The notes under the pieces: generated by a model
The model's database searches: none
Seen by the model: only the letters and a program-made list of their open reading frames with translations
What the model was told of the DNA's origin: nothing
Made by a program: the position numbers and the translations under genes
Shown here: piece after piece, positions 1 to 18,371 of the stretch
Layout of the letters: each line of letters opens with the position of its first letter
Numbering within the stretch: position 1 is the first letter of the stretch
Source of the DNA: Magallana gigas
Taxonomy: Eukaryota
NCBI RefSeq assembly: GCF_963853765.1
Contig: NC_088854.1
Coordinates: forward strand, 43,028,001-43,092,000
Direction: 5' to 3'
Length of the DNA: 64,000 bases

Positions 1-515
1 AAATTTATGTAAAAGCATCCTCAGGTAATGTAGTTTCAATCGTGTTCAAATCATGATCATCAGGGGTAGGGTGAGCCACAAAAGGGGATCCAATTTTACA
101 TAGGAAAAAAATTTAAACTATTCTAAAAAACTCATGTGTAAAAATATATGCAAGCTATATATGACATATTGTTGATTCTCAATTGTTTAGACTGTGGCCC
201 CTGGACAATTATTGGGCCCCACAAGGGTTGAAAGCCTGATGTAGGTAAATATATATATATCTATGAGCAATTGTTAAGATCATCTCTAGAACTGTGAAGC
301 TTAATATGTAATATAATGGCTATGAAATCATCCTGTTACAAAAAGGGCTTAATGCTTAACATTAGAATATCTGGAGAAAAATTTATTTTCACAAATCTAT
401 TCTACTACATACGTTGTCAATATATTTTGTATATGACTCCATAAAGCTCCATAAAGCTGATTTTATTATGGCTATTGTTCCTCAGGTGAGAGATGTGGTC
501 CATGGGCCTTTTGTT
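1..515 (+). mobile_element. 3' part of a Helentron-associated (HINE-like) non-autonomous element, truncated by the window start
   Basis: Shares blocks with the 3158-3875 copy (aagcatcctcaggtaatgtag...; ctcaggt...atgtg..ccatgggcct.ttgtt terminus). Confidence 0.6.
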
Positions 516-1143
516 AGTGCATTAATAACTGTACCCCTGGTAATTGGATATCTGTGATATGAACTTAGTTATTTCATTATTAAATGAAAGAAGACCATCT
601 ATTATCTAAATCTATTAGCTACCAAGGTTTTTCACCATGAACATTTGTAACATTATACAGCAGAAATTGTTTTCGAAGGTTAAATGCAAATTACATATAT
701 TTTGTAATGCATGGTTAAGACAAAGTTCAAGGGCCCTATAGATGGATGTACAGATTTTTTTACCTTATAGGTATTTCATAATAATTTAATAATGAACTTG
801 TTTTTTATGAGAGTGAAGTAGTGTAGTAATAAAGATTCGGGTTAGCATAGTACTGTTTTCTTGGTATCTTTTTATATTGTTTTTAAGATAATTGTTTTAT
901 CTGTAAGGGATTTAAATCTGCCTTAATGTATAATCTTTTTATATTTCCTTACAAGTAATCAAATTTTTATTGAAAACATCATTCTTAAAAAATGAGGGTT
1001 TCAAAACATCACTTAAATGAAAACTTAATAGAATTTAGTGTAAAACAAAACATTTATCATTCTTCATTTTCCATTTGCATTCATTGATAATGTTAATTGT
1101 GAGCATGAAATTTGAGATTCTGTTTTTGTTTAATTACATACAG

Positions 1144-3271
1144 CCTGTTCCTACAACATTACCTATACGAGACTTTGTGGAAATTAACACGGTAAGTCTA
1201 TAGACAGAATTTAAAATAGTCCTTAGATAACTGTTTTCGTCCTATTTGCATGAAATTACTTCACCATTACTTCACCATTGTTTTTCTGAAAGGAGAAATA
1301 AGCATATAAACTACTGTAAATTCCTAATTAAACGTGAGAATTAATATCCGCATAAATTTGCCATCTCTCAGATTTTAAAATCTTGCTGTTATTTTTCTGA
1401 CAGGTGTAAACTCAAGAAACTATGATAAAAATCTAGTGTTCGCGATTTCATATTCTTGCGATTTGATGCAGAATGGTTGAATCGCGGAATTAGTACTAGT
1501 GAAATATAAGGAATCTACAGTAACCTATCTTTGGGAAGGTTTGGGTGTTTATAGATGATATGCCACTTCTAGTACTACATATTGTTGCATTTATTCTGTA
1601 AGTTTCGTTTGACCTTTACAATTATCCTTTACAGTTATCACATTTAGTACTTGAATCTAAATGTTGGGGGAAGAAAAAAATCTTTAACAAATTTCAACTA
1701 TGTACATGAAATAGAGCTCATGTTTAGATCCAGAAATGTTTCCAGTTGGGGGGGGGGGGGGGGGGGGGGAGGTTGGGGTTGTGAGATAGTTTATAGTTGT
1801 GTTTGCTGGGGGGGGGGGGGGCTGACTACCCCCACCCACCCACCCCCTTCCCTGTTTTTATACCCCCGCTCCGAAGGAGAGGGGGTATACTGTTTTACCC
1901 TTGTGTGTCTGTCTGTCTGTCTGTCCGTCTGTCTGTCCGTCCGTAACAAAAATTTCTGTCGCATTTATCTCAGCAACTATTTATCCCAGATGCTTGAAAT
2001 TTTTACACAGTGTTTGTTAAGGCATGCCATATCGTGGGATATATTTTTGTACCAATCGGATGTCAACTTCCTGTTAAATGACGACTTTGCTTATTTTTTA
2101 ACTAAAATTTTCAAACAAATTTTCGTCAAAGATTTCTCAGCAACTATCTATCGCAGATGCTTGAAATTTTTACACAATATTTGTATAGGCATGCCGTATC
2201 GTGGGATATATTTTTGTACCAATCAGACATCAACTTCCTGTTAAATGACGACTTTGTTTATTTTTAGCCAAAATTTTCAAACAAATTTTTGTCAAAGAAT
2301 TCTCAGCAACTGTTTATCGCAGATGCTTGAAATTTTAACACACTATTTGTTTTGGCATGCCATATTGTGGGATATATTTTTGTACCAATCAGATGTCAAC
2401 TTCCTGTTAAATGACGACTTTGTTTATTTTTAGCAAAAATTTTCAAACAAATTTTTGTCAAAGAATTCTCAGCAACTGTTTATCGCAGATGCTTGAAATT
2501 TTTACACATTATTTGTTTAGGCATGCCATATTGTGGGATATATTTCTGTACCAATCGGATGCCAGCTTTCTGTTAAATGTCGACTTTGCTTATTTTGCAT
2601 ATTCACATCAGAGCGGGGGTATCACTAGTGAGCATTGGCTCACAGATATCTTGTTATTTATGTATGAGTTATGATATACAATAGAATGAATGTTTAGTAA
2701 TCACCACCAACAATTTGATTGCAGACAGAGGCTGTGATTCAGACAAGGATAAATATAAAATCAGAGAGCCTGCCTCAGGAGGTCAGTAAAGTAAGGTCAT
2801 TGAAATGTAGAATGTACTTTATTCATGGTGTCCAATACATGTCAATTTGAATGTAGCACACTTTATGGGGGCACTAGTATATATTCCTTATGTGTTATCT
2901 TACTTTATCATGCATCATCTGCTGTTCTCTTACTTACCTTGGTGTGTCTGTTTCACATTATTTCTTAATAGTACAGGTATATCGAGAGTGGATAAGTTCA
3001 ATTATCGTTTGAAATTTTCTAATATATTACAGCTTAATATTAGTTTCTTTGAATATTATGGATTTGTTGCATGCAATAAGTTAAATGTCCATCCTAAACA
3101 ATTATTTGAATGAGTTATATGACCTCTTTATCTAAAGTTTTCAGATATCTCTCAGGGTTTTTTTTAGCTCACCTGAGCCTTTGGCTTTTCTAATCAAAAT
3201 TTGTCTGTTGTCTGTCGTTGTCATCTTCGTTGTTGTTGATGAAAACTTTTCACAATTTCATCTTCTTCTCT

Positions 3272-3314
<43 letters not shown>

Positions 3315-5863
3315 ATTAGATGAAGGGCTTTTAAGTTAGTTCAAATGTAGGGCCAGGTTCCCTTTAAAGGAGAGATAATCTAGAATTATTGAACATTTGT
3401 TGGTATTTTTCTAAAATCATCTTCTCAAAAACCATCTGACCAGAAAAGCTGTAGCTTGTGTGGAAGCATCCTCAGGTAATGTAGATTCAAATTTGTTCAA
3501 ACCATGACCCCCAGGGGTAGAATGAGGCCACAATGGGGCAGAGGAGGGTGGGATTGTTGTTGAATTTTTACAATGAAAATAAATTTCATTATTCTCAAAA
3601 ACTTAAATGTTATAATATATGGTATTACATGTACTTATAAGCAAGCATGTTGACATTTGTTTGTTCTCAGTTTTTAGACTGTGGTCCTAGATAAGGTGTT
3701 GACGGTTTGATGTAGATTAATTTTTTATGAATAGTTCTTCTTGATCTAAATCTTCTTGAGTTCTTTTCAATCTATTTTACTACATTATCTAGATATTTTG
3801 TATATGACTCCATAAATCTGATTTTATCATGGCTGTTGGTGCTCAGGTCATTATGTGACCCATGGGCCTCTTGTTTATGGGTCCCAATGAGTTTGAGACT
3901 CAAGTGTGACTCATATGAATAAAAAACAAAACAAGTGTGTTTTGATCTGAACTAATCTGACCATGATGAAAGAATATAAAAATTAGTATCATTAGCATGC
4001 TGCTTTTCTCATTTCTTTGCTGAGATTCTACTCACAAATAGTATTTTTTTTTTTAAATTTCATCATACAGAACTCTCAGAAACAAAAAAATTAGTCATAG
4101 AAGTATAAATTTACAGAGACTAAAGCATTTAATTTAAAAAAAAACATATCAAGTTATAGTAGTTTATATCTATTATAGATCAAGTACCAGCCTCCACTAC
4201 AAAACCAGACAAGTATCAGATCTAACGATGAAAACCATTATCAGGTATTAAACGTCTATGTTGCATATAAAAGGTTATTTCCAAGACAGAAATCTTTTTT
4301 TGAAGAACTTTGTTGATATTAAACGTAATTTTACAGGACATTATGAGGAGACTGGTGAGCCGGTACATCCATCAATTTAAGAAGGACAGACAGCTGGACG
4401 GAGTGAATGAGGACGACCTGTTAGAGATCAAACAAGACATCTCAAGTCTCAGGTAATGTTAGTGATCAAACTGGACATCTCTAGTCTCTGGTAATGTTAG
4501 AGATCAGACAGGACATCTCTAGTCTCAGGTAATGTAAGAGATCAAACAGGACATCTCTAGTCTCTGATAATGTTAGAGATCAAACAGGACATCTCGAGTC
4601 TCTGGTAATAGAGATCAAACAGGACATATATAGTCTCTAGTAATATAGATCAAACAGGACATCTCTAGTCTCTGGTTATGTTAGAGATCAAACAGGACAT
4701 CTCTAGTCTCAGGTTATGTTAGAGATCAAACAGGACATCTCTAGTCTCAGGTAATGTTAGAGATCAAACAGGACATCTCTAGTCTCAGGAAATGTTAGAG
4801 ATCAAACAGGACATCTCTAGTCTCAGGTAATGTTAGAGATCAAACATGACATCTCTAGTCTCAGGTAATGTTCACGTCTCAGCTGTGAATGAGGATGGTT
4901 TATTAGAGATCAAATTGGACATCTCTAGTTTCAGGTACATGTAACGTTCATGTCTAAGGTATCCAACAGCACCTGTTTTTCCCATAGAAAAGGTGGACAA
5001 GAATGATTAAAAGAACTTTGAAAGTAAAGATATCATTATCGGTTAAATGTATGAAAATGTTTTATGGGTTGGTCATATTGTTAGAGCAATACTGAAAGTA
5101 TATATAGTGTTTCTCAATATTTAATCGAAAACTATCCTGGAGGGTTGAGATTTTACAGCTATTTTAGGTTAGAGTGTTTGACATGATGTCATCACTGGGA
5201 ATAGCTTGCGCAATTTTTCATCAGGGTCAGCTGCAATACAAAATCCCCATGGACATCACATTTTTTAGCCATGTATTGAAACCTGATAAGCTAAAAGGGG
5301 CATTTCAACGGAGAAATCTTTGAATTTTTTCATACTTTTGAATGAACATCATTTGAATCCTGGGTATTTGAAAATAATGAGTAATTCAACAAAACATGAA
5401 TTGGTGATATTTTTGGACAAAGTGTAGTCCAAGTTAATTTCTGGATATTCTCGCATGTTTAAAGTCCATTTTCTTTCTTTTATGGTGTTCTTTTTACTCT
5501 TATTTTTTCTGCAGATTTGAGTTAAGAGCCGACAGAAAAAGAGAATCTTGCCTAGCTGTCTCTCTATTGCAAAGTACGAAACAAGAAATCCTGTCCATCA
5601 TACAGGAGTTTAACAGGGCCAGCTACCCACAGCAAACAGTGGGGTATCAAGGTCATAGTCCCCAGAGTAATTCCCAGGTCAGAGGTCATATCAGTGACAG
5701 GGGTCATATGTTGTCTTCTAATGACCTTGAGCAGTTGAAAGAGGACATAATCAGTGGAATTTGTTCCAGGTTACAGGACAATTTACAGCCTTTTCAGGGA
5801 GTGGAAAGACTACCATCCATTGACTCAGATCTCTACACAACACATCTGTACACACAACTGTAA
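1144..5863 (+). CDS. TRPC: 3' exons of a TRPC-family (TRP-gamma/TRPC4/5-like) cation channel; 5' part lies before the window
   Basis: Phase-consistent GT-AG exons 1144-1191, 2725-2781, 4179-4244, 4337-4452 and 5515-5863 join to ...NHYQ|[39 protein letters not shown]|FELR.... This matches the TRPC C-terminal rib-helix/coiled-coil motif (YQ.VMR.LV.RY...[15 protein letters not shown]). The two small upstream exons are less certain. Confidence 0.85.
1855..2655 (+). mobile_element. Helentron-type non-autonomous element carrying ~4 copies of a 166-bp satellite
   Basis: 5' T-run plus subTIR ATACCCCCGCTC (1860-1871) with its inverted copy GAGCGGGGGTAT (2611-2622). (GTCT/GTCC)n microsatellite at ~1906-1942. 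166-bp period (2245 vs 2411). 3' hairpin GTGAGC-attg-GCTCAC (2628-2643) followed by CTTGTT. Confidence 0.8.
3158..3875 (+). mobile_element. HINE-like non-autonomous element in a TRPC intron
   Basis: Starts TTTTTAGCTCACCTGAGC and ends GCTCAGGT...CCATGGGCCTCTTGTT. Homologous to 1-515. Confidence 0.7.
4421..4940 (+). repeat. 38-bp minisatellite derived from the TRPC exon end plus its splice donor
   Basis: Unit TTAGAGATCAAACAGGACATCTCTAGTCTCAG|GTAATG. One copy is the true exon end (4421-4458). Eleven intronic copies follow (4459-4870), plus one longer degenerate copy (~4885-4940). Confidence 0.95.
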
Positions 5864-6286: not shown

Positions 6287-7158
6287 TTTAAATTTAATGG
6301 TTATATAGTTATCATGTACTGTGGTAAAGCTGTGTGTGGACTGTTACAAACTAGCCACTCAGCTATGACTTTTATTTCAAATAGAGACATTTTGTGATAT
6401 TGTAGTTGTGATAAAGTACTTGTGATACTGTACCTATCATTCCTGGCTCCCACTAACTCCTGTACATTCCAGTGTCTGATGGGTTGTTTTTCTTTTTCCA
6501 ACTGTGAATTGATGTTTGAAGGACTAGAATTCAATTCAGTGGAAAAAATATCCATTTCCTTGTTTAAGTTTTATTTTTGGAAGCAATGTGTCACAATCAT
6601 GATTGACTGGTGAACTGTGCTAGAAGTGTGTTGAGAGGTGTCTAAATTTTAGTTTATATTTTATTATTGATGCTTTTTGTTTTCTATCTCATTAAGATTT
6701 TAACTGTGGTATTTTAAGTGTAGTTTTTATTGTTTTGTTAAAAATTGAATTCGTTTAAACTGTAGCAACAGTATAACACACTGTCTGATGCAGGTGATCA
6801 AACGGTCATCATTGGGCGACGGCGGTAACGTTAGAATATTGTCTGATACCTGAATGTCATCACTCATGCTTAAATCATGTGCCATATGTGATTGTAGTAC
6901 ATCAAGAACTGATACCATTTTGTTTGTAATTTATACAATAAAGATTTACAGAAATACAGAAATGTTATAAAATATGTATGTTTCGGTAATTAGAGTATCT
7001 GAAAGTACAAGTACATATTGAGACCTGATATATTTAAATTATTAAAAAAAGATAACATTTTTTTTATTAGTAATCATGAATAAATGAAATTAGAAATGAT
7101 TTACAATATTTAACCAAAACAATTTAATCAGACATTAAAACATTGTATTCAGTTGACA

Positions 7159-9400
7159 TCACCGGCCTCTCCACCTGTAAATGAAATGGACAAACATCAG
7201 AGATTAATTTTGATAAATCAGTCTAGTCCTTTAAAAATATATGTGTGTTTTGTACATTTATACTTGGAATAAAGAGACCTCAACATGTGAATACTTAAAG
7301 AGAAACGTGAATCGAACACTTTGGTAAACCGCTTAAACCCCAAGCGGAAGTCAAGCTGGGGGGGGGGGGTGGTCTGGACCCCTTCCCCCTCTCGGAAAAT
7401 TGAAATGTCTTTAACTAATATATAAAATAACCGGAAAAAAATCCCCCGATTCCACCCCAACCCCAAGCAAACTCAAATATCCATCGGAACCCCCCCCCCC
7501 CGGAAAAAAATTCTGGATCCGCACATGAACCCCCATTGTGGAAACAAATCTAGGCAAATTAAAATACTGCAGATAATAATCAAATCGTGTCTGTAGATTT
7601 TTGCCAACATTTGAAAATAATTAACCCGTTTTTGCCACCGACACATCCGTGTTCAATGCACATGACATCTCGATGTACGGTTTTTAGCTCACGATGCAAG
7701 CAAAAACCAAAGGCTAAAATTTCCAGGTGTAAAGTAATTTCATAGTTATAGCACGTAATATCAAGAGAACCTGGTATCCCTCGCCTTAATTTTGGCAGGA
7801 ACCTTTTACTTAAAATAAATATATTCTTATATGGATAAATAATTTTTGTTGTCAACCCCATCCTATACCTTCGAAGTTGATACATTTACATGTATTTTTA
7901 AAAAGCATATTGTTTCGGTCTGATCATATGTTAAAAAAAAAAGAGAAGAAAAAAAACTAAAACCGATTACTAGTGATCCTGATTTTTTAACTTGTATTTA
8001 CCTTCTTATGAAGAAGAGCTATGTATAAAGATATAGGAAAAAGATCAAATTTTAAATCAAAATATTTGGATTTTTTTCACTAGTATTACTTTATTGCCAA
8101 AATCATATTTTCATATGTCAAAGTTTAAGGTTGGTCATTTTGATAAATTTTTGACCACCCAGCCTCCTTAAAGTCATGCGATCTATAGATAAGGTTATGC
8201 CCAGCATTTTGTGGGATATCTTACCATATTTACTCTGGTTAGGAATAAAGTTCCGTATAATTTGAGAGTAGTTGTCTCTGTTAAGCCACAAAGCTTTAAA
8301 CCTCTTAGAATTGACATCACTGACGTAGTCAATGTAGCGCTCTCCTTCGTCTGTTTCGTTTACCGAAAGTTTGTACATCTGCAAGAGTCATAAATCAAAT
8401 AAAATTCAATAATCGTCGGCAGCAGCAACAATACACCTTACCTCTCAAAAAACAAGGAAGATCGAAAAAATTTGAAAATTGATACGAATCTGAAATTACC
8501 ATTGTTTCTTAAATTTGAAAGAAACAACGCCTAAAAAATACCTAGATTTCATAATCATAGGGGCTGTTGTGGTTGTACCTTGAAACCTATGGGACTGTGG
8601 TCCACGATATTGATGACGTCAACATCGTTGTCTACCCAGACCTCGATCCGACCTCTGTCAATGGAATACACCCTGTTCACCATGTGTAGCTTTAAGCCAT
8701 CGAAACCAGCATCATCTACAGAGAAAAGAACACACCGTTTCATTTTTTAATTTTAAATACATTTAATTTGCATACCAGTACGTATCAATGACAAAATATA
8801 CTTTAACGATAATAATGCAATGTCTCAAAATTTACAAACCAAATAAAAGTGTTGAAACATTTCGATCCAGAAGTTTGTGTTGTCGTAGATCCAGCTCAGA
8901 CACTCTCTTTCCATGGAAGGTGATTTTAATGGTTTTTGATTCGTTCCCCCGCATGCCGGATGCCACGAATCTGAAAGTGGAGGCGGGGCGATCACAGACG
9001 GTGACGATAGGGATCATGGAGGCCGGAGACAAGCCGTCGTCCGTACATGGGGTGTAGTCCCACAGACACTCGGTGAACACCCGGTAATGGGGCAACCTGC
9101 GCAAGCATCTCTTAATGGACCGAAATTTGGATAAAATGATGTATCCGGGGCCACAGGGACATTTTGATGTTTGGAAAAAGGGCACCGCGGTTACAAGTTC
9201 ATCTATATGTCGGGAAGAAAAAGAGAGAACAGGTATTTAAAAAAATGCATTGTATCATTTTGGTTATGACATTGATTATCTCATTATTATTATGAAGATA
9301 TACCTGTGAATTTCTTTAGAACCTCCTCTCCAATCAAACTCCATGCTAATCGCACGTCTGCAGTATGGAGACTGTCAAACACCCTTTCTGACATGAGCAT
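7159..9400 (-). CDS. Gene A: gasdermin/pejvakin-like protein, ~294 aa, 7 exons
   Basis: Exons 9400-9304, 9202-8840, 8715-8579, 8378-8225, 7713-7626, 7293-7264 and 7174-7159 are all GT-AG, phase-consistent and total 885 nt; polyA signal at ~7062. Protein MLMSERVFDSLHTADVRLAWSLIGEEVLKKFTDELVTAVPFFQ...RLPHYRVFTECLWDY...ITFHGKRVSELDL...VINIVDHSPIGFKMYKLSV...GIHMLRSLYSKWRGR. Motifs align without gaps to recalled GSDME segments RPKYQFLSLTLGDV, SSFGTLRKQEVDL and VLEIPAATTIAYGVIELYV. The last three exons are less certain. Confidence 0.7.
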
Positions 9401-9548
9401 GCTTATACATTTGTGTATTTCATTTCATAATGACGTCATAATATCATTCCTTGTGGCGTCACAACAATGAAAAAATGTTTTGATGCTATTAAAACGTCAC
9501 AATACTTATGACGTCATAATGTGCTGAAGTTGACAAGAAGAAGGAAAC
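9401..9548. promoter_or_regulatory. Putative bidirectional promoter with CRE/ATF-like palindromes
   Basis: Only 148 bp separate the divergent ATGs. Perfect ATGACGTCAT palindromes at 9430-9439 and 9508-9517; imperfect sites TGGCGTCA (~9453) and AAACGTCA (~9492). Confidence 0.6.
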
Positions 9549-12500
9549 ATGGATCCGTACCTCTATAAGACGCTTAAAAATTGTGATGCCAAGCGTTGTT
9601 GGGCACTAGTGAAAAATGTCATCGGCGTTCAATTAATAGGTTAGTCCATTCAATTACAGAATTTAATAAAGACAAACTGAATAATTCGACCAATGCTACA
9701 ATATTCGAATTATTTTATTGTATCATAATAATGCGCTTTAGTATTTTCAGTAATAAATGCACTAGTGTGTTTAACATTTTGTTTTTCGCAGATGATGACG
9801 TTATCATGGTACCTTTTTTACAAGAGGGACTGCATTACGATCTTAGCCGTGTCGTAATCAAAGAGGAGAGGTCTCCAATGCAAAAACTGGCACGGGTGGC
9901 TCCAGGAGCGATCTCTGTCGGAAAGCTGACGGATTTTGTCAAGGATGAAGTGATCCCCGGCACGTTTAATAGGCTTAGTGAAGTACAAAAGGTGGAAACC
10001 ATCCACAACCAACGCTACGTGTTCGAAGAATCCGATATGAAGCACGGCGTGAAGAAAACTGTTCGAGTGGAGATTCTCGGTTGTGACCACTATACCTTGT
10101 GGAGCAATCCTGAATGCAACAGTCTGGTGGTGGATTTCGACAACAGAGGTAACATTCACACAGTTTCTGTGTAGACTTCTTAGTATTCTTGTATTTATCC
10201 ACTTATTTTTACATTTTCCAGTGTCTATGTCTTTGATAACACTACGAATCGATTTTGAAATGTATAGTCCAATACTTTTCATCGATGACTATTTCGTTAT
10301 TTAAAATTTACATGCAGTTGCTGAAAAATATAAGTAAATTAAATAAGGAATCATTCTTTAAATTTTATGAGGTAATCGAAGACGATCGGAGGTGGTGAAA
10401 TCTAAAAACCTTAAATATGAGCTTTATTGGAATTGATCACCTCCGACCGTATATAAACAACTCATAATACTGATAGACGATTCCTTAAAGGGACTTGGAC
10501 ACGATTTGAGATCAAAAAATTTATTTCTATTTTTTATGTATAAAATGGTTTACTTGTGCATTTTAAATGATTGACCAAAATATTAAATATTAAAGTCAAG
10601 TTACAAACGAGATACAGAGGTAAGAATTGATAGTTATGTAAACAAAGCTCGAGTCTTATAGTTGTTTACAAAAATGTAATGTAGAATTTTACCATTTCTT
10701 AGACAAAATGACATGTAAAAAACAATTTAAACTAATTCAATATCTTCATAAATACTATTATCAACAAAAGAAAGTTACATTTGATTAAAACTTACATCAA
10801 TACAACACATATGTAAAAATGACAATATTCGAGCTTTGTTTACAACACAAAGAATTATGAACTCTGTATCTTGCTTATAACTTGATATTTTAGCTTCAAA
10901 ATTTTACATAGTATTATAAACTTCTATATTTATCAGTATAAACATTGAAAATGGAAAAACAAAATTTGAAAATTTTAAGTCAAATCGTGTCCAAGTCCCT
11001 TTAATCCTTGAATTTCCGTGTATTTTAAAGCTTTATATCTTTACATTTATCATTATATTTATCCACCTTGCAAACTTGAACATAATGATTTTAAGCGTCT
11101 TAAATTGAAATAACTGGTATAAAACTGTAGTTTTGCAACCATCAGATCCATAAATATGCTGTGAAGAATTGTATATCAATATTGTCGTTGAAGTTTGTAT
11201 CGTCAGCGAAAAACAATCAAGAACATGCATTAATTAATAAGCATTTGTTAGGACGATGTTTTTGACCTTGAATTTTACGTAATACTGTTCCTATTCACGT
11301 TCGCTTTACCTGAAACGAAAAGATTTGGGCCTTGTCATTGCCAATTGTTAACGGCATCAAAAGCCTACATAATGTTCAAATGTTTGTTTTTATCATGAAA
11401 AATGGGTGTGTGTTGCTTTACTATAACGTTTTCACAAATTCACTCGTTTTCTCCGAACTCGCATTTTTTTTCTCGTTGACGCGGTCAGTATCATTGTTTT
11501 AAGAAATAAATACCAACTTTTCTGGGAAAAACAAATGGTGCAATTAAACTTCAAAAGGTGTATATTTTATTATCTTATTTTAGTGTTATTTTTAACCAAA
11601 TTGGCCTTTCCAATGTTTTTCCCCAGTTGGTCTAGTGCAAGTATGTGTAAAATTCATATAAAGTCAAGAAAAAAAATCCCCTACAAATCCAAAATATTTG
11701 CATTTGATTGTTTAAAAAAAATCTTATACGTGTCCTTTAAGTAATTTTGAAGGCATTACTGGAAAAAAATATAGATCTTACATATATACACGTAGTCATT
11801 TGGAAGGCGTTATTGGAAAAAAATATAGATCTTACATATATACATGTTGGACATTAACATACATATCTCATGTATTGGCAACTGATATATTGTAGGATTC
11901 CCCTATGTGAAGAAATTCTACCTGATATATGACGCGTTCTACGCTCACCACGTCAAAGTTCACGTCCGTATCAACGACGAGGTGGACGAGTTCTGCGTCA
12001 ACCAGCACATCCCGATCGGCTTCCGATTGAAGCGCTACACGATCAAGCCCAATGGGCTGATCGGGCCCATCAAAGATATCACCAGCAGCGAGTGGGACGT
12101 CCACTGGATCAAGAGCTCCATGTTTAGGAACCCCATGGATGCCCTTCCCAGAGTTCCTGACTCAAATGCTCCTAGCACAAGTAAGTGGACATACCTTTTT
12201 TTGGTTTATCAATTCTTTAATAAATGTATAATGATAAAAAAGAAACTGATTTGAAGGCTTTGAAAACAACGCTAATGAATTTTTGGTAGGCAAAATGTAT
12301 AGCTAAATTGATATACAATGAAAAAATGGGTTATAAAATCCCGTTTGGGATATTATACCCAAAACGGGATATTCTCATGCAAATGTGTACAGTGCAAACA
12401 TGGAAATTTCTGGTGTGTTAAGAATGTGGCAAAAAAGCATTGTAATAGATAAAATGAAACAACTCTTTTGTACTCTGACTGTTTAAGGAGCTAGAGTGAT

Positions 12501-14859
12501 CCCTCGGTAGATCCCAAACTTCTTGGGTATCAATCTTAAAAACTTATAGAAAACATCCTTACCAATTACGTTGTGCATCTGATAATTGACTAGTATGTTT
12601 ATGCGGCTTAATATGCTAACATGGTAACATTTTGGAAACCTTTGTCGTCAAAAATATGATATGAAATAGCGGTAGTAGAATAAGTATGGCATGATTAGAT
12701 AAATATAATCAAAGTTATACGTTGACGTTTAAATTTGGGGGGAAATTGTGGGGTTGGGTAATTTGGAGTTCAGTTGTTAATGGAGAAGAAGCTAAAGTCG
12801 GAGAGCACCAAAAGTCAGACGTTTTTCTATAACAAGAACAACAATATTAAATATATTCATAGACAGGTTTACTACCATTAGACAAAAGGAAATAACATAC
12901 ATTGTTATACTTTCATGTTAAATACTGAAATCTGATTGGTTAAGACGCAGTTAATAATATTTACTATTACCCTAAGCGTTAGCAACGCACTTGGCAACGG
13001 GTAACATTAAAAAATGTTACATGCGCGAAAATTATGCGCGTACGGTTCGCTGTAGAATTCACGTTATTCCTATATAAAAGCAGTAAAATTTTCTTAAAAA
13101 TTTTAAAAAAGACATTCAGTATAACAAAATAAATAGTGCCTGTTTGGGAGGATAACAGTTGAAATTGACACCCCTCGAAAACCATTGTCAACCTCCGCTT
13201 CGCGTCGGTTGACAATGGTTTTCTCGGGGTGTCAATTTCAACTGTTACCCTCCCAAACAGGCACTATTTATATAATATAAGCATGTTAAGGATGTGATAT
13301 GAACTTTGTTGGTCACGTGATCAAATTACATGAAGCTTGAAGGCTCCCCAAAAGGTTTGACCACATACCATGGTTGGGAAAGACGACTTTATCAAAAATT
13401 ATTTATATGTCTATTTATATACACAACGAAGCATGACACAAACCATAAAAGGTTATGATGGTCATTTTGACGTCTTATTTTGACATTAGCCCATGAAAAA
13501 GTTCACCAGGATATAAAAAATTTTTTGACCCTTATCACTTCTCATTAAAACAAATATTTTCAAATGCAAATACATGTAGAACTGTTTTAACAAGACCTTG
13601 GACTTTCGGTAGTATGTTACTATCTATTTCTTGCGCCAAAACAAGTAAAAAAATGACGCTGGTTTGAAGTGAAATATACACCGATTGCGTAGTCTTAGCT
13701 CAAAAGCCGTTTTCAATGAGCTATGGCTGAGTGGCCAGCAATTAAATAGACAGGGCTACGTCACATTGATGTTTGACACAACTACCCAAAGTCCAAGCTC
13801 CTGTTTATGTAAAATAAGACTTTTTTTCTTCATCAACAGGTCGAGCCCGATGAAGTTTTTCAGCATCTTGGATTTTCCATTCCGTCATATAATTTGTACT
13901 TTTATCTAACAGCATGTAAAAATAAATCTTAACATTTTACTTTTCTTTTCTTTCAATTCCATTTACATTCAAATACATTTTAAAATCTACAGCATCCCGA
14001 TTCTGTTTCATTTACAATGTATGTTTCTTAAAATCATATACATTGTAATAGGCATGCGCGATTACATTCCATTCTCAATAATTATTTGTAGAAGTGTGAT
14101 TTAAAGTAAACATTTGTTTTAATACATTTGAATTAATGTGTTAGAATTTTTTTTGGAATTTACCCTTGTGTCAGAAGACAGCTTCTTTACCCCCTCCACT
14201 TTCTCCATTTAATGCTTTGAACTTGCAAGTTCAGATGATTTAAGATTGTTTAGAAGATAACGTTTCTGAAGCAATTATTTTGTGGATTTACTAGAATTAC
14301 AAAGAAACTAAATTAATGTTCATTTAAAAACGTTTAATTCTAAGACTTTTAAAATAGAATTAACTTATTGTAGTAAATTATGTAACCATACACCAAGAAA
14401 CGATATAAAGTCCGTTCACAAAAAAAATTCTATAAGAAAATGTCAAATTGTTTTGCTAATAGTATTAGTTAATTAGAATTTGGATGAGAGAACACGAAAT
14501 AAATGAGAATTGGGTGCAAGAACACTGGGGCCATGCATATGTAATATAGCTTGTCGAGTGAGGGTGCCTGAGGCTGTATATATGTAAACCACCGGTGTAC
14601 ACACGGTCAAAGGTCTCTCATCTATCATGCTAAAGAATATATATACAATGAAATGTCAAAAAACATTAATAACCATACTGACAAACATACAGTTCCGAGG
14701 CACAAAGAACAGGGATCCTATTCGAAAGCAAGGCCAACGCGGTTCTTAAATCGTTTATACCAGGAGTATAGTAGCTGGTGCCACATGGATTTGGATCACG
14801 TGTTTTGGTGGAGCGGCCGGACGGGGGCCACAAAAATAATACAAAGCCATAAAAAATGA
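9549..14859 (+). CDS. Gene B: gasdermin/pejvakin-like protein, ~299 aa, 4 exons; paralogue of gene A
   Basis: Exons 9549-9639, 9792-10148, 11896-12180 and 14693-14859 total 900 nt with all junctions in phase 1; AATAAA at ~15022. Protein MDPYLYKTLKNCDAKRCWALVKNVIGVQLIDDDVIMVPFLQEGLHYDLSRVVIKEER...EFCVNQHIPIGFRLKRYTIKPNG.... VPFLQEGLHYDLSRVVIKEER aligns without gaps to recalled PJVK [21 protein letters not shown]. The last exon is less certain. Confidence 0.72.
10489..11000. mobile_element. Kolobok-like MITE (512 bp) with TTAA target-site duplication
   Basis: TTAA|AGGGACTTGGACACGATTTGA ... TCAAATCGTGTCCAAGTCCCT|TTAA: a perfect 21-bp TIR. TTAA TSD with purine-purine termini is typical of Kolobok. 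Confidence 0.8.
12905..13275 (+). mobile_element. ~370-bp non-autonomous element ending in a long hairpin (copy 1)
   Basis: Near-identical to 46734-47103. Terminal stem-loop at 13129-13271 has ~65-bp arms and loop TCCGCTTCGCGTC. Confidence 0.85.
13588..13806. mobile_element. MITE of the AACAAG..CTTGGACT family
   Basis: TIR AACAAGACCTTGGACT / AGTCCAAGCTCCTGTT. The interior is the reverse complement of the 22861 and 58704 copies. Confidence 0.65.
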
Positions 14860-15908
14860 ACAGGGACGACAAACACTCTAGCTTATTCATACATGTATGC
14901 CTTGTTTTATGTTTGACGCATGATCACAGCAGACAAACAGCGAATTTACTCAGAGACTACACTTTTATTACGCGCGACAGGCTGCTCCCTTTTTAATGAC
15001 GGTGGAAAAACAGGGAAGTCAATAAAATGATACTTGACATTTTGTTCTTTGATATATTCAGAAAAGACACACATTGTAGTTAGAATTAGTTTTATTGCGG
15101 AAATTCAACAATAACAGTGTTTGAAGTAATACCTAGTAAATGATTCATCAATCAATTCGGCATGTTTTCACTCATATTACATGATGTCCTTGCATGGAAA
15201 ACATAAACAATCTGTCATTTCTACTGTCCAACTTCTTTTATTCTAACAGAGTTTCCTCGGTGCGTGTTTGTGGCTTACCTCATTTACAGGATAAGTGAAA
15301 GAGGACAAGCCAGAAAAAAAGCAATTAATACGTCAGACGAACAAAAAGACACATTACAGGCAAAGTCGACACCCTTGTCTCATTCCAGTAGGGGGATGTA
15401 ATTAGGATTTGTATGTACAGCGGGACCTTGATCATGTAGTGTACTATAAATACCATGTATTTCTATCACGTCTTAAGTGAAACACTAAATATACTTATCT
15501 AGCACATTTTTGTCGCCAATGGCCCGCTAAAGACTATCACTCTAGTCCATGCGTACACAAACGTGTATGTTTCTTAACTTGAATGTGTTTTTGTCAGTGT
15601 CATTTTTCCCCGGTCTATATTGATGACATTTTCGACATAGGCCCACAAGGTACAAATAATAACATATTTAATGTCTCTGTTCATAACAAGGTATAGAAAA
15701 ATTCACGTACTCCGCTAGGTTATCAATCACACGGACAAGAAAACATCTAATTAAGCGATTGGTTTTATGAATCAAGTTGCCCTAAAATCACACATCAATT
15801 AACTAAACAACATTGTACCCTGGATTTTTATGTACAACCATATAAACACGAGAACAAACAAAAACTCAGTCTTTGTTTTTCCTCACATCCGTATTGCGTA
15901 TAAGAATA

Positions 15909-17218
15909 CTAGCATCCACAGTTCGGTGGGGGTCGACAGTTTGACATTGGTCCTTGTTGATCACAGATACCTACAAAAAATAATGGGGTGTACTAGGAAT
16001 AGAAAAGATGGCATATTTGGTTACTAATTATTAAGTATGTTCACTACGAAAAAATCAACCAAATGATTTTATAAAATGGTATAGGCACACTGTCTAATCA
16101 ACCAAATGATTACATGCACGTATATGAGAAGAAAATAAGACAAACCTGGATGGCTGTTTGCGTTGCCTAGAAGACCTCTGTACTGGAGGAAGTTGATGGC
16201 CCGTGGGTTCATGTTGTACTCCACAAGGAATCTACAGAGGGTCTCCAGGTTGTACTGGGTCGTGATGAGGCCTAGCTCTTGTCCGTTCCTTACACCGTCC
16301 ATGTCAGAGTCGGCGAGACATAACTGTTCTGTAAATCTGTGGCCATTGGCGGCGAAGTCCTATAGAAAAATCGCAGTCGTGAAATATACTTAGTCTACTA
16401 AAATATGTGTTTTCATAATTGCCAACATTAATAATAACTGCTTCAATAAGATACTAACATTCAAAGTATATAATTATAACTCTCACGAATTGTTTAGATG
16501 TAAAGGTGTCCTATATTTTGATAATTTGATAGTCATCATTAAAGAAATTTGATTGTAAATTAAGGCTAAGGCATGTTGGTTTATAAGTGTTGTTCAACAT
16601 TATTGGCTATATTTTCTTGTAATAAATTTTGCATGGCGACCGACCTTTAGTTTAAGCATGCTAACAGACATTGAAAGTACAAACCGTTTTACAAAAGAAG
16701 TTTTATCTATAAATTATTTTAAGTAGTATTGTTGGAGGGGGGTTAAAATTATGTTTTTCCATATGGGAATATATGCAAAATGAATACAATTGTATTTTCG
16801 TAGAAATTCGTAAATTCAAAATCGAATGAAAATGTGTTCCCAAGTAGTATCAAGGAATTTACTAAATAAAAATAATTTTGGGTAATAAGTCGGATAAACA
16901 GAAAACGAAATTACTGAAACTATAAACTTAAACTGAGCGATCTTTGACACTGTCTTTAAAAAGAAACGTGTTTAAATAAAACTATTTTTTGGTGCGTTGC
17001 GAAAACAGCACCAAAAACCAAGGAAAAAATCATCTACTCACGGATCCAAATCGGTTAAGTTGGGTTCCAGTCGTGCTCGCGTGTCCGACTCTGTCCCAAG
17101 TTCTCCCCGGACAGCAGGGGTTGGGAACATTGTGTCCATTCAAAATTCGGTCCCTATATTGCGGTAAAGAGTGCACCAACGACACAAGTATACATCCTAG
17201 AACTGCGAAACGAAGCAT
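15909..17218 (-). CDS. Temptin-like secreted protein, ~150 aa, 3 exons
   Basis: Exons 17218-17042, 16359-16146 and 15970-15909. Signal peptide MLRFAVLGCILVSLVHS, then PQYRDRILNGHNVPNPC...VGH...LNRFGSDFAANGHRFTEQLCLADSDMDGVRNGQELG...SHPG. This is the temptin signature (IPNG.VPNPC, GVGH, N.FG.DF, LC..DSD.DG..NG.ELG, SHPG). Confidence 0.88.
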
Positions 17219-18371
17219 GTTGTCTTTTGGGAACCTCAGGGTAGACTAATGCTGTGATCACGGGCCGGCCGACTAAAAATACCTCTTCAGCTCCCCGCAG
17301 TTGATTCGTCCGTCTTATTCTGTGACGAGTTTTCTACCTTACCAGGATATGCGCAATCCCCGCCTGTCATTATAAGGTGACGGACGTCAATCAGGGATCA
17401 ACACAAGTCTGTGTTTACCCTTAGATATAATGGTAATTGCTCATAAAACCGCGGTCGGACTTCAATGTCTCGTTAATTCTACTGACTAGTAACACCTTCA
17501 GTCTTGTAAATAAGACTGTAATTAATTAAAGCGCTAGAAAGTTCACTTGAGATTTTTTAAACGATATAAAATTGTCATCCTTAGCTCACCTGAGCGGGAA
17601 ACTTTCCTGCCTAATGTATGTGGAGAGGAGGTGATAAAAGTGAAACCATCTTTGTTAAAATGACCGGAAATTCGTATAAAGAAAATTTGCATCTAGATGT
17701 ACAGTGCATACCCTTGGGTCGTAAGCATGCAGTGTATATAAGTGGTGTATACCCATTGATAGTCCTTGTATTCTATATTCATAATTCATACAATTTATAA
17801 TTTATATAAAGAAAAATATTGAAGCTCTGTTGTATTATATTACACAAAACACGTACATTCATTATATTATTTAAACTCTAAATCATTAAGTTCCTTTTTT
17901 TGAGAATGTCACGTGGACTTTTGATAGACCAGTGTACATTTTTTTTAAAAGAGTAGGGTGTGTCAAGTTAGAGAAAATCGATCGTTTGATACAGGCACAT
18001 AGCAACCGGTTTTGAAAGTGGGGGGGGGGGGGGGCGGCAGGCTCATCCCAAAAAAACCCTTGACAAGCAAAAAAAATAAAATAAAAATCGAAATCTTTCC
18101 AAAATCCTGAAAATCCTAATCCCGGGGAGGTTTACTTTTAACTTCAATTTCACTGTCCATTTCCTTATTTTTAATTCATTTTTTTTTACATGCTCCCTTA
18201 AAAGGGGGGGGGGCAACTCCATGTTATTTCAATTTTTTGGATGTAAATTTAAGAAAAATCTTTGCTGCGCAAAAAAGTGGGGGGGGGGGGGGGCAAGCCT
18301 GATTAAAAAGTTAAAGATACAACATTGATTGGAAAACTTTGGGTAATTATGCAGTCTTTAAAATACATGTA

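What the first reader, a model, noticed from the sequence alone, without database searches (positions are those of the whole stretch)
7159..14859. Head-to-head pair of divergent gasdermin/pejvakin-like genes lacking the autoinhibitory domain: a possible two-component system
Seen in sequence: two spliced genes (~294 and ~299 aa) point away from each other with ATGs 148 bp apart. They are paralogues with an identical first-exon geometry (30 codons plus a phase-1 intron) and aligned blocks: MSERVFDSLHTADVRLAW / MDPYLYKTLKNCDAKRCW; DELVTAVPFFQ / DDDVIMVPFLQ; VDNDVDVINIVDHSPIGFK / INDEVDEFCVNQHIPIGFR. From recalled human sequences, gene B DDDVIMVPFLQEGLHYDLSRVVIKEER aligns without gaps to GSDME DGDLIAVSNLNDSDKLQLLSLVTKKKR and to PJVK [21 protein letters not shown]. 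Gene A PHYRVFTECLWD matches the P.Y......L.D motif, ITFHGKRVSELDL matches SSFGTLRKQEVDL, and both HxPIGF motifs match PJVK HTTIAF. Neither has the ~200-aa helical gasdermin C-domain. Established: fungal RCD-1-1/RCD-1-2 are pore-domain-only gasdermins activated as a heteromer. Inference: these co-promoted paralogues may be an animal heteromeric gasdermin-like pair, co-expressed in fixed stoichiometry.
Basis: partly seen in the sequence, partly recalled or inferred. Interest (0 to 1): 0.92.

Follow-up and report, generated by a model that had tools for sequence, protein, structure and literature searches.

The report
Paired gasdermin-fold genes in oyster
Two neighbouring Pacific oyster genes that point away from each other encode small proteins with the shape of the pore-forming half of gasdermin. 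One belongs to the uncharacterised C11orf42/DUF4663 family and the other is an unrecognised sister branch of it. The pairing is conserved in mussels and scallops, but nothing yet shows that the two proteins bind each other or make pores.

Summary
The window is Magallana (Crassostrea) gigas.

**The genes**
- Gene A runs on the minus strand, CDS 9400 to 7149, and encodes 258 aa. It is identical to RefSeq XP_011434932.3.
- Gene B runs on the plus strand, CDS 9549 to 13853, and encodes 248 aa. It is identical to XP_011434920.3.
- They are spliced, divergent paralogues with start codons 148 bp apart.

**What they are**
- B is a clear member of Pfam DUF4663 (C11orf42-like). A is a divergent sister type below Pfam's cut-off (hhalign A versus B: 97.9%, E 3.5e-13).
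- Neither matches the gasdermin sequence profile.
- The gasdermin fold of human C11orf42 was published in 2022, so this part is not new.

**What seems new**
- The A-type subfamily.
- The A/B head-to-head pair, kept with a promoter containing cAMP-response elements (CRE, TGACGTCA) in oysters, a scallop and a mussel.

**What is not shown**
Heteromer or pore function is untested. The complex prediction gave no verdict. RCD-1 partners are alleles whose co-expression kills, which is the opposite logic to a shared promoter.

Other notes of this scan cover the same stretch (s1-399302, s1-399425). None is on other DNA.

The parts
9304..9400 (-). Gene A (LOC105333585) exon 1, coding part. ATG at 9400-9398, second ATG at 9394. 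Donor GT, phase 1.
   Evidence: identical to P0053; joint 9202|9304 in RNA run X1; L012 mapping
8840..9202 (-). Gene A exon 2
8579..8715 (-). Gene A exon 3, ending in the ...SPIGFK motif
8225..8378 (-). Gene A exon 4, with donor GTAAGA after ...NQSKY + G
   Evidence: cDNAs L006 and L012
7149..7174 (-). Gene A exon 5, coding part (GGEAGDVN, stop TGA at 7151-7149)
   Evidence: the L012 block at 7148-7175
9401..9548 (.). 148-bp region between the two start codons. It acts as a shared or overlapping bidirectional promoter. Perfect CRE palindromes ATGACGTCAT lie at 9430-9439 and 9508-9517, and CGTCA half-sites at 9457 and 9495.
   Evidence: 3 matches in the window against 0.09 expected; two full CREs also in Saccostrea and Ylistrum, two half-sites in Mytilus; cDNA contigs L012 and L013 run through it
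9549..9639 (+). Gene B (LOC105333573) exon 1, coding part: 30 codons plus 1 base
   Evidence: (identical to P0047)
9792..10148 (+). Gene B exon 2. Matches DUF4663 at 32.3 bits, profile positions 39-159.
11896..12180 (+). Gene B exon 3. Matches DUF4663 at 29.2 bits, profile positions 180-260. Carries the HIPIGF and FRNPMDALPRVP motifs.
13840..13853 (+). Gene B exon 4, coding part (completes a Ser codon, then RAR and stop). This is the true last exon.
   Evidence: L012 and L013 blocks at 13836-13887; conserved with Saccostrea

Best explanation
This is an anciently duplicated, divergently transcribed pair of DUF4663 (C11orf42-like) genes in the Pacific oyster.

Shown:
- Each gene encodes a cytosolic single-domain protein of about 250 aa.
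- The predicted fold of each is the gasdermin N-terminal (pore-domain) fold, followed by a short tail. There is no C-terminal repressor domain.
- B is a canonical family member. A is a fast-evolving sister type that Pfam does not recognise.
- The head-to-head arrangement and CRE sites in the spacer are conserved across oysters, a scallop and a mussel.
- Both genes are under purifying selection, and both are spliced and present in the same RNA samples.

Inferred mechanism:
- A CREB/ATF/CREM-type factor on the shared CREs switches both genes on together in one cell type.
- The two proteins then act in the same process as membrane-associated, probably non-lytic gasdermin-fold proteins.
- They may act as hetero-oligomers.

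My odds: identity, fold and family about 0.9; co-regulation through the shared CRE promoter about 0.6; physical A-B partnership about 0.3; pore formation about 0.15.
For: Gene models and identity:
- The models are identical to RefSeq proteins.
- All junctions are present in RNA contigs.

Family:
- B-type scores 96.4 bits against DUF4663. The window's own exons score 32.3 and 29.2 bits against a cut-off of 25.
- Relatives are named C11orf42-like in Saccostrea, Mytilus and Saccoglossus.
- A is linked to B by BLASTP E 1e-9, hhalign 97.9%, and shared intron positions and phases.

Fold:
- The B model has pLDDT 88.2 and pTM 0.83. The A model has pLDDT 75.5 and pTM 0.75.
- In Foldseek, the top 22 hits for B and the top 32 for A are all gasdermins.
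- Independent literature reports that human C11orf42 has the GSDM fold (PMC8986115).

Conserved pairing:
- Saccostrea L008, Ylistrum L010 and Mytilus L009 all carry an A-type gene on the minus strand directly upstream of the B-type gene.
- The A-types form one split with 100/99 support.
- CREs are conserved in the spacer.

Selection: dN/dS of A against a related oyster cDNA is 0.105.

Single locus: there is only one such locus in the 564-Mb genome.

The non-lytic reading rests on two points:
- The gasdermin-like span is about 200-210 residues, against 226-247 in solved pore-forming domains.
- Human C11orf42 was judged to lack membrane-penetrating regions (PMC8986115). It is a cytoplasmic, spermatid-specific protein that interacts with SNX5 (PMC8564638).
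Against: - No experiment or prediction shows that A binds B. The complex job gave no verdict.
- RNA contig depths differ between runs (the A:B ratio is about 0.5 in X1 and above 3 in X3). Co-expression is therefore not shown to be tight.
- Contigs that bridge both genes do not show single transcripts or promoter sharing.
- The models align about as well to pore-state chains as to inactive-state chains, so a pore-competent protein is not excluded.
- A freshwater mussel (Potamilus) has a B-type gene without an A-type within 10 kb upstream.
- The tissue and condition of expression in oyster are unknown.
Confidence: 0.6

Rival explanations
1. Binary pore-forming system. A and B are both pore-domain-only gasdermins that hetero-oligomerise into a lytic membrane pore. 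The shared promoter would set their stoichiometry.
For: - Both proteins have the gasdermin pore-domain fold and no repressor domain.
- The models align to pore-state chains with about 170-194 residues.
- The pair is conserved over deep bivalve divergences.
- Partner proteins encoded by divergent gene pairs are known elsewhere, for example H2A-H2B (my own knowledge).
Against: - RCD-1-1 and RCD-1-2 are alleles kept in different individuals, and their co-expression is sufficient for death (PMC7414189). A constitutively co-transcribed lytic pair would need a further, unknown trigger.
- The domain is 20-45 residues shorter than solved pore-forming N-domains.
- Human C11orf42 was judged to lack membrane-penetrating regions (PMC8986115).
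- There is no sequence match to the gasdermin profile.
- RNA depth ratios vary between runs.
Confidence: 0.12
2. Two independently acting paralogues. An inverted duplication left the copies sharing a compact promoter region, and that constraint keeps them together. The proteins neither bind each other nor act in the same step.
For: - A and B are only 21% identical and have different conserved tails. B has RNPxDxLPxxP and A has NQxKYGGEAGD.
- A evolves faster. Between C. gigas and Saccostrea, A is 64-69% identical and B is 79%.
- RNA depths are unequal and vary between runs.
- Potamilus has a B-type gene without an adjacent A-type.
Against: Retention of the exact head-to-head arrangement, with CREs, in three bivalve orders is more than a neutral expectation would give. 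Both genes are under purifying selection.
Confidence: 0.25
3. Trans-regulation. One paralogue, probably the fast-evolving A, holds the other inactive. It would stand in for the missing C-terminal repressor domain, and a signal would release it.
For: This rests on indirect evidence only: neither protein has a cis repressor domain, transcription appears obligatorily paired, and the two evolve at asymmetric rates.
Against: There are no interaction data. The complex prediction gave no verdict. No precedent among solved gasdermins appeared in the searches.
Confidence: 0.05

Closest known systems
Pfam DUF4663 / human C11orf42 (Q8N5U0) family
   Same: - Gene B matches the profile well above the cut-off. 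Orthologues are annotated C11orf42-like.
- It has the same predicted gasdermin-like fold without a repressor domain (PMC8986115).
- Its function is equally uncharacterised.
   Different: - The oyster proteins cover only profile positions about 8-260 of 367, so they lack the longer vertebrate C-terminal region.
- Gene A is below the Pfam cut-off (16.8 bits) and defines a separate branch.
- No paired paralogue is mentioned for C11orf42 in the papers I read, and I did not examine its locus.
Trichoplax adhaerens gasdermin (PDB 8jyv, 8jyw), a pore-domain-only animal gasdermin
   Same: - It has a similar overall size and also lacks a C-terminal repressor domain.
   Different: - Identity in the structural alignment is only 7-16%.
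- There is no sequence-profile relationship.
- The aligned span is about 36-44 residues shorter in the oyster proteins.
- Pore formation is shown for TrichoGSDM and not tested here.
Neurospora RCD-1-1 / RCD-1-2
   Same: - It is a gasdermin-like fold without a repressor domain.
- Two related proteins are needed together (PMC7414189; PDB 8jyz, 8jyx and 8jyy appear among the matches).
   Different: - The RCD-1 partners are alleles of one locus in different individuals, and their co-expression kills. Here two ancient paralogues sit in one genome on one promoter region and are transcribed together in living tissue.
Canonical metazoan GSDME / pejvakin
   Same:
   Different: - There is no hit to Pfam Gasdermin PF04598.
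- There is no C-terminal domain and no linker with a caspase site.
- Oysters have a separate caspase-cleaved CgGSDME (PMC11830306, PMC12122919).

Membership tests
Pfam DUF4663 (PF15668, C11orf42-like) | Score at or above the 25-bit gathering cut-off: gene B | tested here: met
   The window's exons score 32.3 and 29.2 bits. The 98%-identical full-length P0019 scores 96.4 bits over profile positions 8-257. The genome scan hits only this locus.
Pfam DUF4663 (PF15668, C11orf42-like) | Score at or above the 25-bit gathering cut-off: gene A | tested here: not met
   The score is 16.8 bits and covers the N-terminal 50 residues only. Homology to B-types is nevertheless shown by hhalign at 97.9%, E 3.5e-13 over 226 columns, and by BLASTP at E 1e-9. 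A is therefore a divergent sister type, not a profile member.
Gasdermin (PF04598, pore-forming N-domain) | Sequence match to the family profile | tested here: not met
   There is no PF04598 hit at E up to 10 for the exons or up to 1 for the full proteins. The PDB sequence-profile search returned only chance NUDT5 matches at E 0.16.
Gasdermin (PF04598, pore-forming N-domain) | Gasdermin N-domain three-dimensional fold | tested here: met
   [not shown]
Gasdermin (PF04598, pore-forming N-domain) | Two extension regions that refold into membrane-spanning beta-hairpins | tested here: inconclusive
   - The aligned span is 203 residues in B and 211 in A, against 226-247 in solved N-domains.
- The candidate regions are short and have the lowest confidence. 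They are residues 76-104 and 134-155 in B, and about 79-97 and 137-161 in A.
- No coordinates or residue-level alignment were available.
Gasdermin (PF04598, pore-forming N-domain) | Acidic-lipid binding, oligomerisation and pore formation | not testable with these tools
   This needs liposome and cell assays.
Full-length (two-domain) gasdermins | C-terminal helical autoinhibitory domain and a cleavable linker | tested here: not met
   The CDSs stop at 258 and 248 aa. The cDNAs end there. The models show one domain plus a short tail.
RCD-1-like two-component gasdermin | Direct heterotypic binding of the two partners | tested here: inconclusive
   Complex prediction gave no verdict.
RCD-1-like two-component gasdermin | Partners are antagonistic alleles kept apart until cell fusion | tested here: not met
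   A and B are paralogues in one haplotype. Both spliced mRNAs are present in the same RNA samples. Compare PMC7414189.

The most novel reading that the evidence does not exclude
The A/B pair is an animal binary gasdermin-like module. The two repressor-less gasdermin-fold paralogues would be made together from one CRE-driven promoter and hetero-oligomerise on membranes. One would either complete the other or restrain it, and the complex would be lytic or membrane-remodelling on a signal. That would be a trans-regulated alternative to cleavage-activated gasdermins, kept for several hundred million years in bivalves.
Probability: 0.12. Interest if true: 0.85.

Novelty: new variant of a known kind. 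Interest (0 to 1): 0.55.

Why it matters
- Gasdermin-fold proteins without a repressor domain raise the question of how their activity is controlled. Known answers are cleavage of a short peptide (bacteria), disulfide reduction (Trichoplax) and allelic partners (fungi).
- The C11orf42/DUF4663 branch has no known function in any animal.
- A deeply conserved, co-located pair of two very different versions of this fold gives a concrete and cheap experiment: express A, B and A+B.
- The CRE-rich promoter, together with the spermatid-specific expression of human C11orf42, gives a testable lead on where to look, namely in gametogenesis.
- If the pair is merely two co-located paralogues, the result is still a corrected annotation and a newly delimited subfamily.

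Tried and rejected
- **Complex prediction.** Complex prediction on A (P0053) plus B (P0047) scored 0.00 in both runs. The partner's own fold was uncertain and the verdict was 'no answer'. This is not evidence either way.
- **PDB sequence-profile search** with the family alignment returned only NUDT5 matches at E 0.16, which is chance.
- **Genome-wide six-frame scan with Pfam Gasdermin PF04598** found nothing at all. Published work describes a canonical GSDME in this oyster (CgGSDME; PMC11830306, PMC12122919), so the exon-by-exon scan is too insensitive to be informative.
- **The protein-atlas search** gave no usable hit for A. For B it gave RAG1- and phage-like clusters with low shared-feature counts, which I treat as noise.
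- **Weak Pfam hits for A-types** are all below their cut-offs: FokI cleavage domain 19 bits, Stealth_CR2 12.5-13.6 bits, Imm42 20-26 bits against a cut-off of 27.2. I rejected them as assignments.
- **Rejected gene models.** A with exon 4 read through to the stop at 8118 (284 aa) is contradicted by cDNAs L006 and L012 and by RefSeq.
- **Raw poly-A run X19**, sampled at about 1%, gave no reads on the exons, so I have no strand or transcript-start information.
- **The search for homologous proteins with the family profile** did not reach beyond oysters.
- **The library search with B exon 2** gave only 18 relatives, so the alignments used for folding are shallow (19 rows).


Full report
**1. What is in the sequence**

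The region holds two spliced genes on opposite strands.

- Gene A is on the minus strand. Its coding exons are 9400-9304, 9202-8840, 8715-8579, 8378-8225 and 7174-7149.
- Gene B is on the plus strand. Its coding exons are 9549-9639, 9792-10148, 11896-12180 and 13840-13853.
- All introns are GT-AG.
- The translations are 258 and 248 aa. They are letter-for-letter identical to P0053 (XP_011434932.3, LOC105333585) and P0047 (XP_011434920.3, LOC105333573) of Magallana (Crassostrea) gigas. Both are named only 'uncharacterized protein'.
- The two start codons are separated by 148 bp (9401-9548).
- The first two introns of both genes are phase 1 and lie at homologous positions.

RNA supports every junction.

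- In run X1, one contig carries A spliced at 8378|8579, 8715|8840 and 9202|9304, at depth 94. Another carries B spliced at 9639|9792 and 10148|11896, at depth 204.
- A 1712-nt contig from another RNA run (L012) contains both fully spliced cDNAs joined through the spacer. It maps as eight blocks that include A exon 5 (7148-7175) and B exon 4 (13836-13887).

That stretch has no counterpart in the cDNAs or in Saccostrea.

**2. Paralogy**

- A and B are 21% identical (BLASTP E 1e-9).
- A profile of A-types against a profile of B-types gives hhalign probability 97.9%, E 3.5e-13, over 226 columns, which is end to end.
- Only this one locus exists in the 564-Mb assembly.

**3. Family**

- Gene B's exons 2 and 3 each pass the gathering cut-off of Pfam DUF4663 (32.3 and 29.2 bits against 25).
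- The 98%-identical full-length protein scores 96.4 bits.
- Relatives are annotated 'C11orf42-like' in Saccostrea cucullata, Mytilus californianus and the hemichordate Saccoglossus. Others come from a scallop and a freshwater mussel.
- Gene A scores only 16.8 bits and carries no Pfam assignment.
- Neither protein matches Pfam Gasdermin or any solved gasdermin by sequence.

**4. Fold**

- With a 19-row alignment, AlphaFold2 gives B a pLDDT of 88.2 and pTM of 0.83. A gets pLDDT 75.5 and pTM 0.75.
- In Foldseek against the PDB, the first 22 hits for B and the first 32 for A are all gasdermins. They include Trichoplax, GSDMB, D, E and A3, bacterial gasdermins and RCD-1.

The gasdermin-fold claim therefore holds, on predicted models.

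In the oyster models the gasdermin-like span is 203 residues (B, 16-218) and 211 residues (A, 18-228). The solved N-domains span 226-247 residues. The candidate 'finger' regions are short and have the lowest confidence. I could not obtain a residue-level superposition, so whether the hairpins are competent remains open.

Both proteins end 30-35 residues after the domain, so there is no repressor domain.

**5. Conservation of the pair**

- In Saccostrea cucullata, a 258-aa A-type gene (minus strand) lies about 115 bp from the B-type gene (plus strand). A TRP-channel gene lies upstream and a temptin-like gene downstream, collinear with the window.
- In the scallop Ylistrum balloti, a 266-aa gene lies head-to-head with the B-type gene, again beside the TRP channel. 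A-type queries match it far better than B-type queries do.
- In Mytilus californianus, a 332-aa unannotated gene lies head-to-head with the C11orf42-like gene and carries A-type exons (tblastn E 1e-10).
- A-type signature motifs recur in these species: (C/S)PCxPG, E(C/F/L)(L/I)WD(Y/F), and (N/C)(Q/E)xKYG.
- In a maximum-likelihood tree the five A-types form one split (100/99) against all B-types plus Saccoglossus. The root is unknown, and the Mytilus A branch is long.
- A unionid, Potamilus, has a B-type gene without an A-type within 10 kb upstream.
- A is under purifying selection, with dN/dS 0.105 against a related oyster's cDNA.
- A changes faster than B. Between C. gigas and Saccostrea, A is 64-69% identical and B is 79%.

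**6. The spacer**

- The perfect palindrome ATGACGTCAT occurs twice in the 148 bp, and three times in the whole 64 kb where 0.09 is expected.
- Two full TGACGTCA sites also lie in the spacers of Saccostrea and Ylistrum. Mytilus has two half-sites.
- cDNA contigs run through the spacer. L013, a B cDNA, begins inside A exon 1. The 5' ends of the two transcription units probably overlap, but contigs cannot prove single transcripts.

**7. How it probably works**

What is shown: fold, family, absence of a repressor domain, a conserved pairing with CREs, presence in the same samples, and purifying selection.

What I infer: a CREB/ATF/CREM-type factor turns both genes on together, and the products act in one process at membranes.

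I lean towards a non-lytic role, for these reasons:
- The domain is shortened.
- Human C11orf42 was judged to lack membrane-penetrating regions (PMC8986115).
- Human C11orf42 is a cytoplasmic, spermatid-specific protein that binds SNX5 (PMC8564638).
- Two constitutively co-transcribed partners that killed on meeting would be self-defeating.

The last point separates this case from RCD-1. There the two proteins are antagonistic alleles, and co-expression is necessary and sufficient for death (PMC7414189). Divergent pairs that encode partner proteins are known, for example H2A-H2B (my own knowledge), so a hetero-oligomer remains plausible at about 0.3. The one complex prediction allowed gave no verdict. 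Contig depths do not point to a fixed ratio.

**8. Verdict**

- The 'gasdermin-like, no C-domain' reading is right at the level of fold.
- The genes belong to the already described but uncharacterised DUF4663/C11orf42 family, and B's orthologues are already annotated as such.
- The A-type subfamily appears to be new. So does the deeply conserved, CRE-linked head-to-head A/B arrangement.
- The two-component pore idea is untested, and I think it unlikely in its RCD-1 form.

Noticed in passing
L006 and L007 (RNA contigs of a related oyster), mapping to window 9359|9813 on the minus strand: A minus-strand transcript runs antisense through B intron 2 and exon 2. It then splices with a canonical GT-AG from about 9813 to an acceptor inside A exon 1 at about 9359, skipping A's ATG, and continues through A's normal splices. 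Both splice sites are present in the window. This could be an alternative upstream start of A that is also a natural antisense to B.
   Followed up: partly
window 9115-9644, plus strand: The plus strand is open from the antisense of A exon 2 and exon 1, through the spacer, into B exon 1. ORF callers have deposited 'proteins' such as P0027, P0028, P0001 and P0002 that are artefacts of this reading or of intron read-through.
   Followed up: yes
window 10485-11004, 12900-13300 (hairpin arms 13129-13198 and 13202-13271) and 13500-13900: B's introns contain MITE-like elements. One has 50-nt terminal inverted repeats at 10485-10534 and 10955-11004. Another is a 70-nt, 93%-complementary near-perfect hairpin. 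In RNA runs these stretches have contig depths of thousands to tens of thousands, which means repeat families transcribed elsewhere.
   Followed up: partly
window 1-5863 (plus strand) and about 14900-17400: The flanking genes are collinear with Saccostrea. Upstream is the 3' part of a TRP-type cation channel (Ank, TRP_2 and Ion_trans domains in the Saccostrea and Ylistrum orthologues). Downstream is a temptin-like gene. The TRP channel is also next to the pair in the scallop.
   Followed up: partly
Saccostrea A-type proteins P0044 and P0030 (orthologues of window gene A): These give near-threshold matches to Pfam Imm42, a bacterial immunity protein family. The scores are 25.8 and 20.3 bits against a cut-off of 27.2, over residues about 107-243. 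The C. angulata orthologue (P0029, 3 residues different from the window's gene A) shows no such hit. This is probably chance, but it could hint at a shared beta-sheet architecture.
   Followed up: no
G000:C4:40711830-40711931 (locus L004): This is a 34-residue match to A exon 2 with 47% identity, interrupted by three stop codons. It may be a decayed fragment or chance.
   Followed up: no
B-type C-terminal tails (window 12100-12180; P0010, P0012, P0015): The motif R(N/D)PxDxLPxxP follows the fold in all B-types and is repeated two to three times in some relatives. It looks like a short linear interaction motif. A-types lack it and end in NQxKYGGEAGD(V/I)N instead.
   Followed up: no
window 7340-7500: Runs of G and C (G13, C12) lie within a degenerate repeat in A's last intron.
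   Followed up: no
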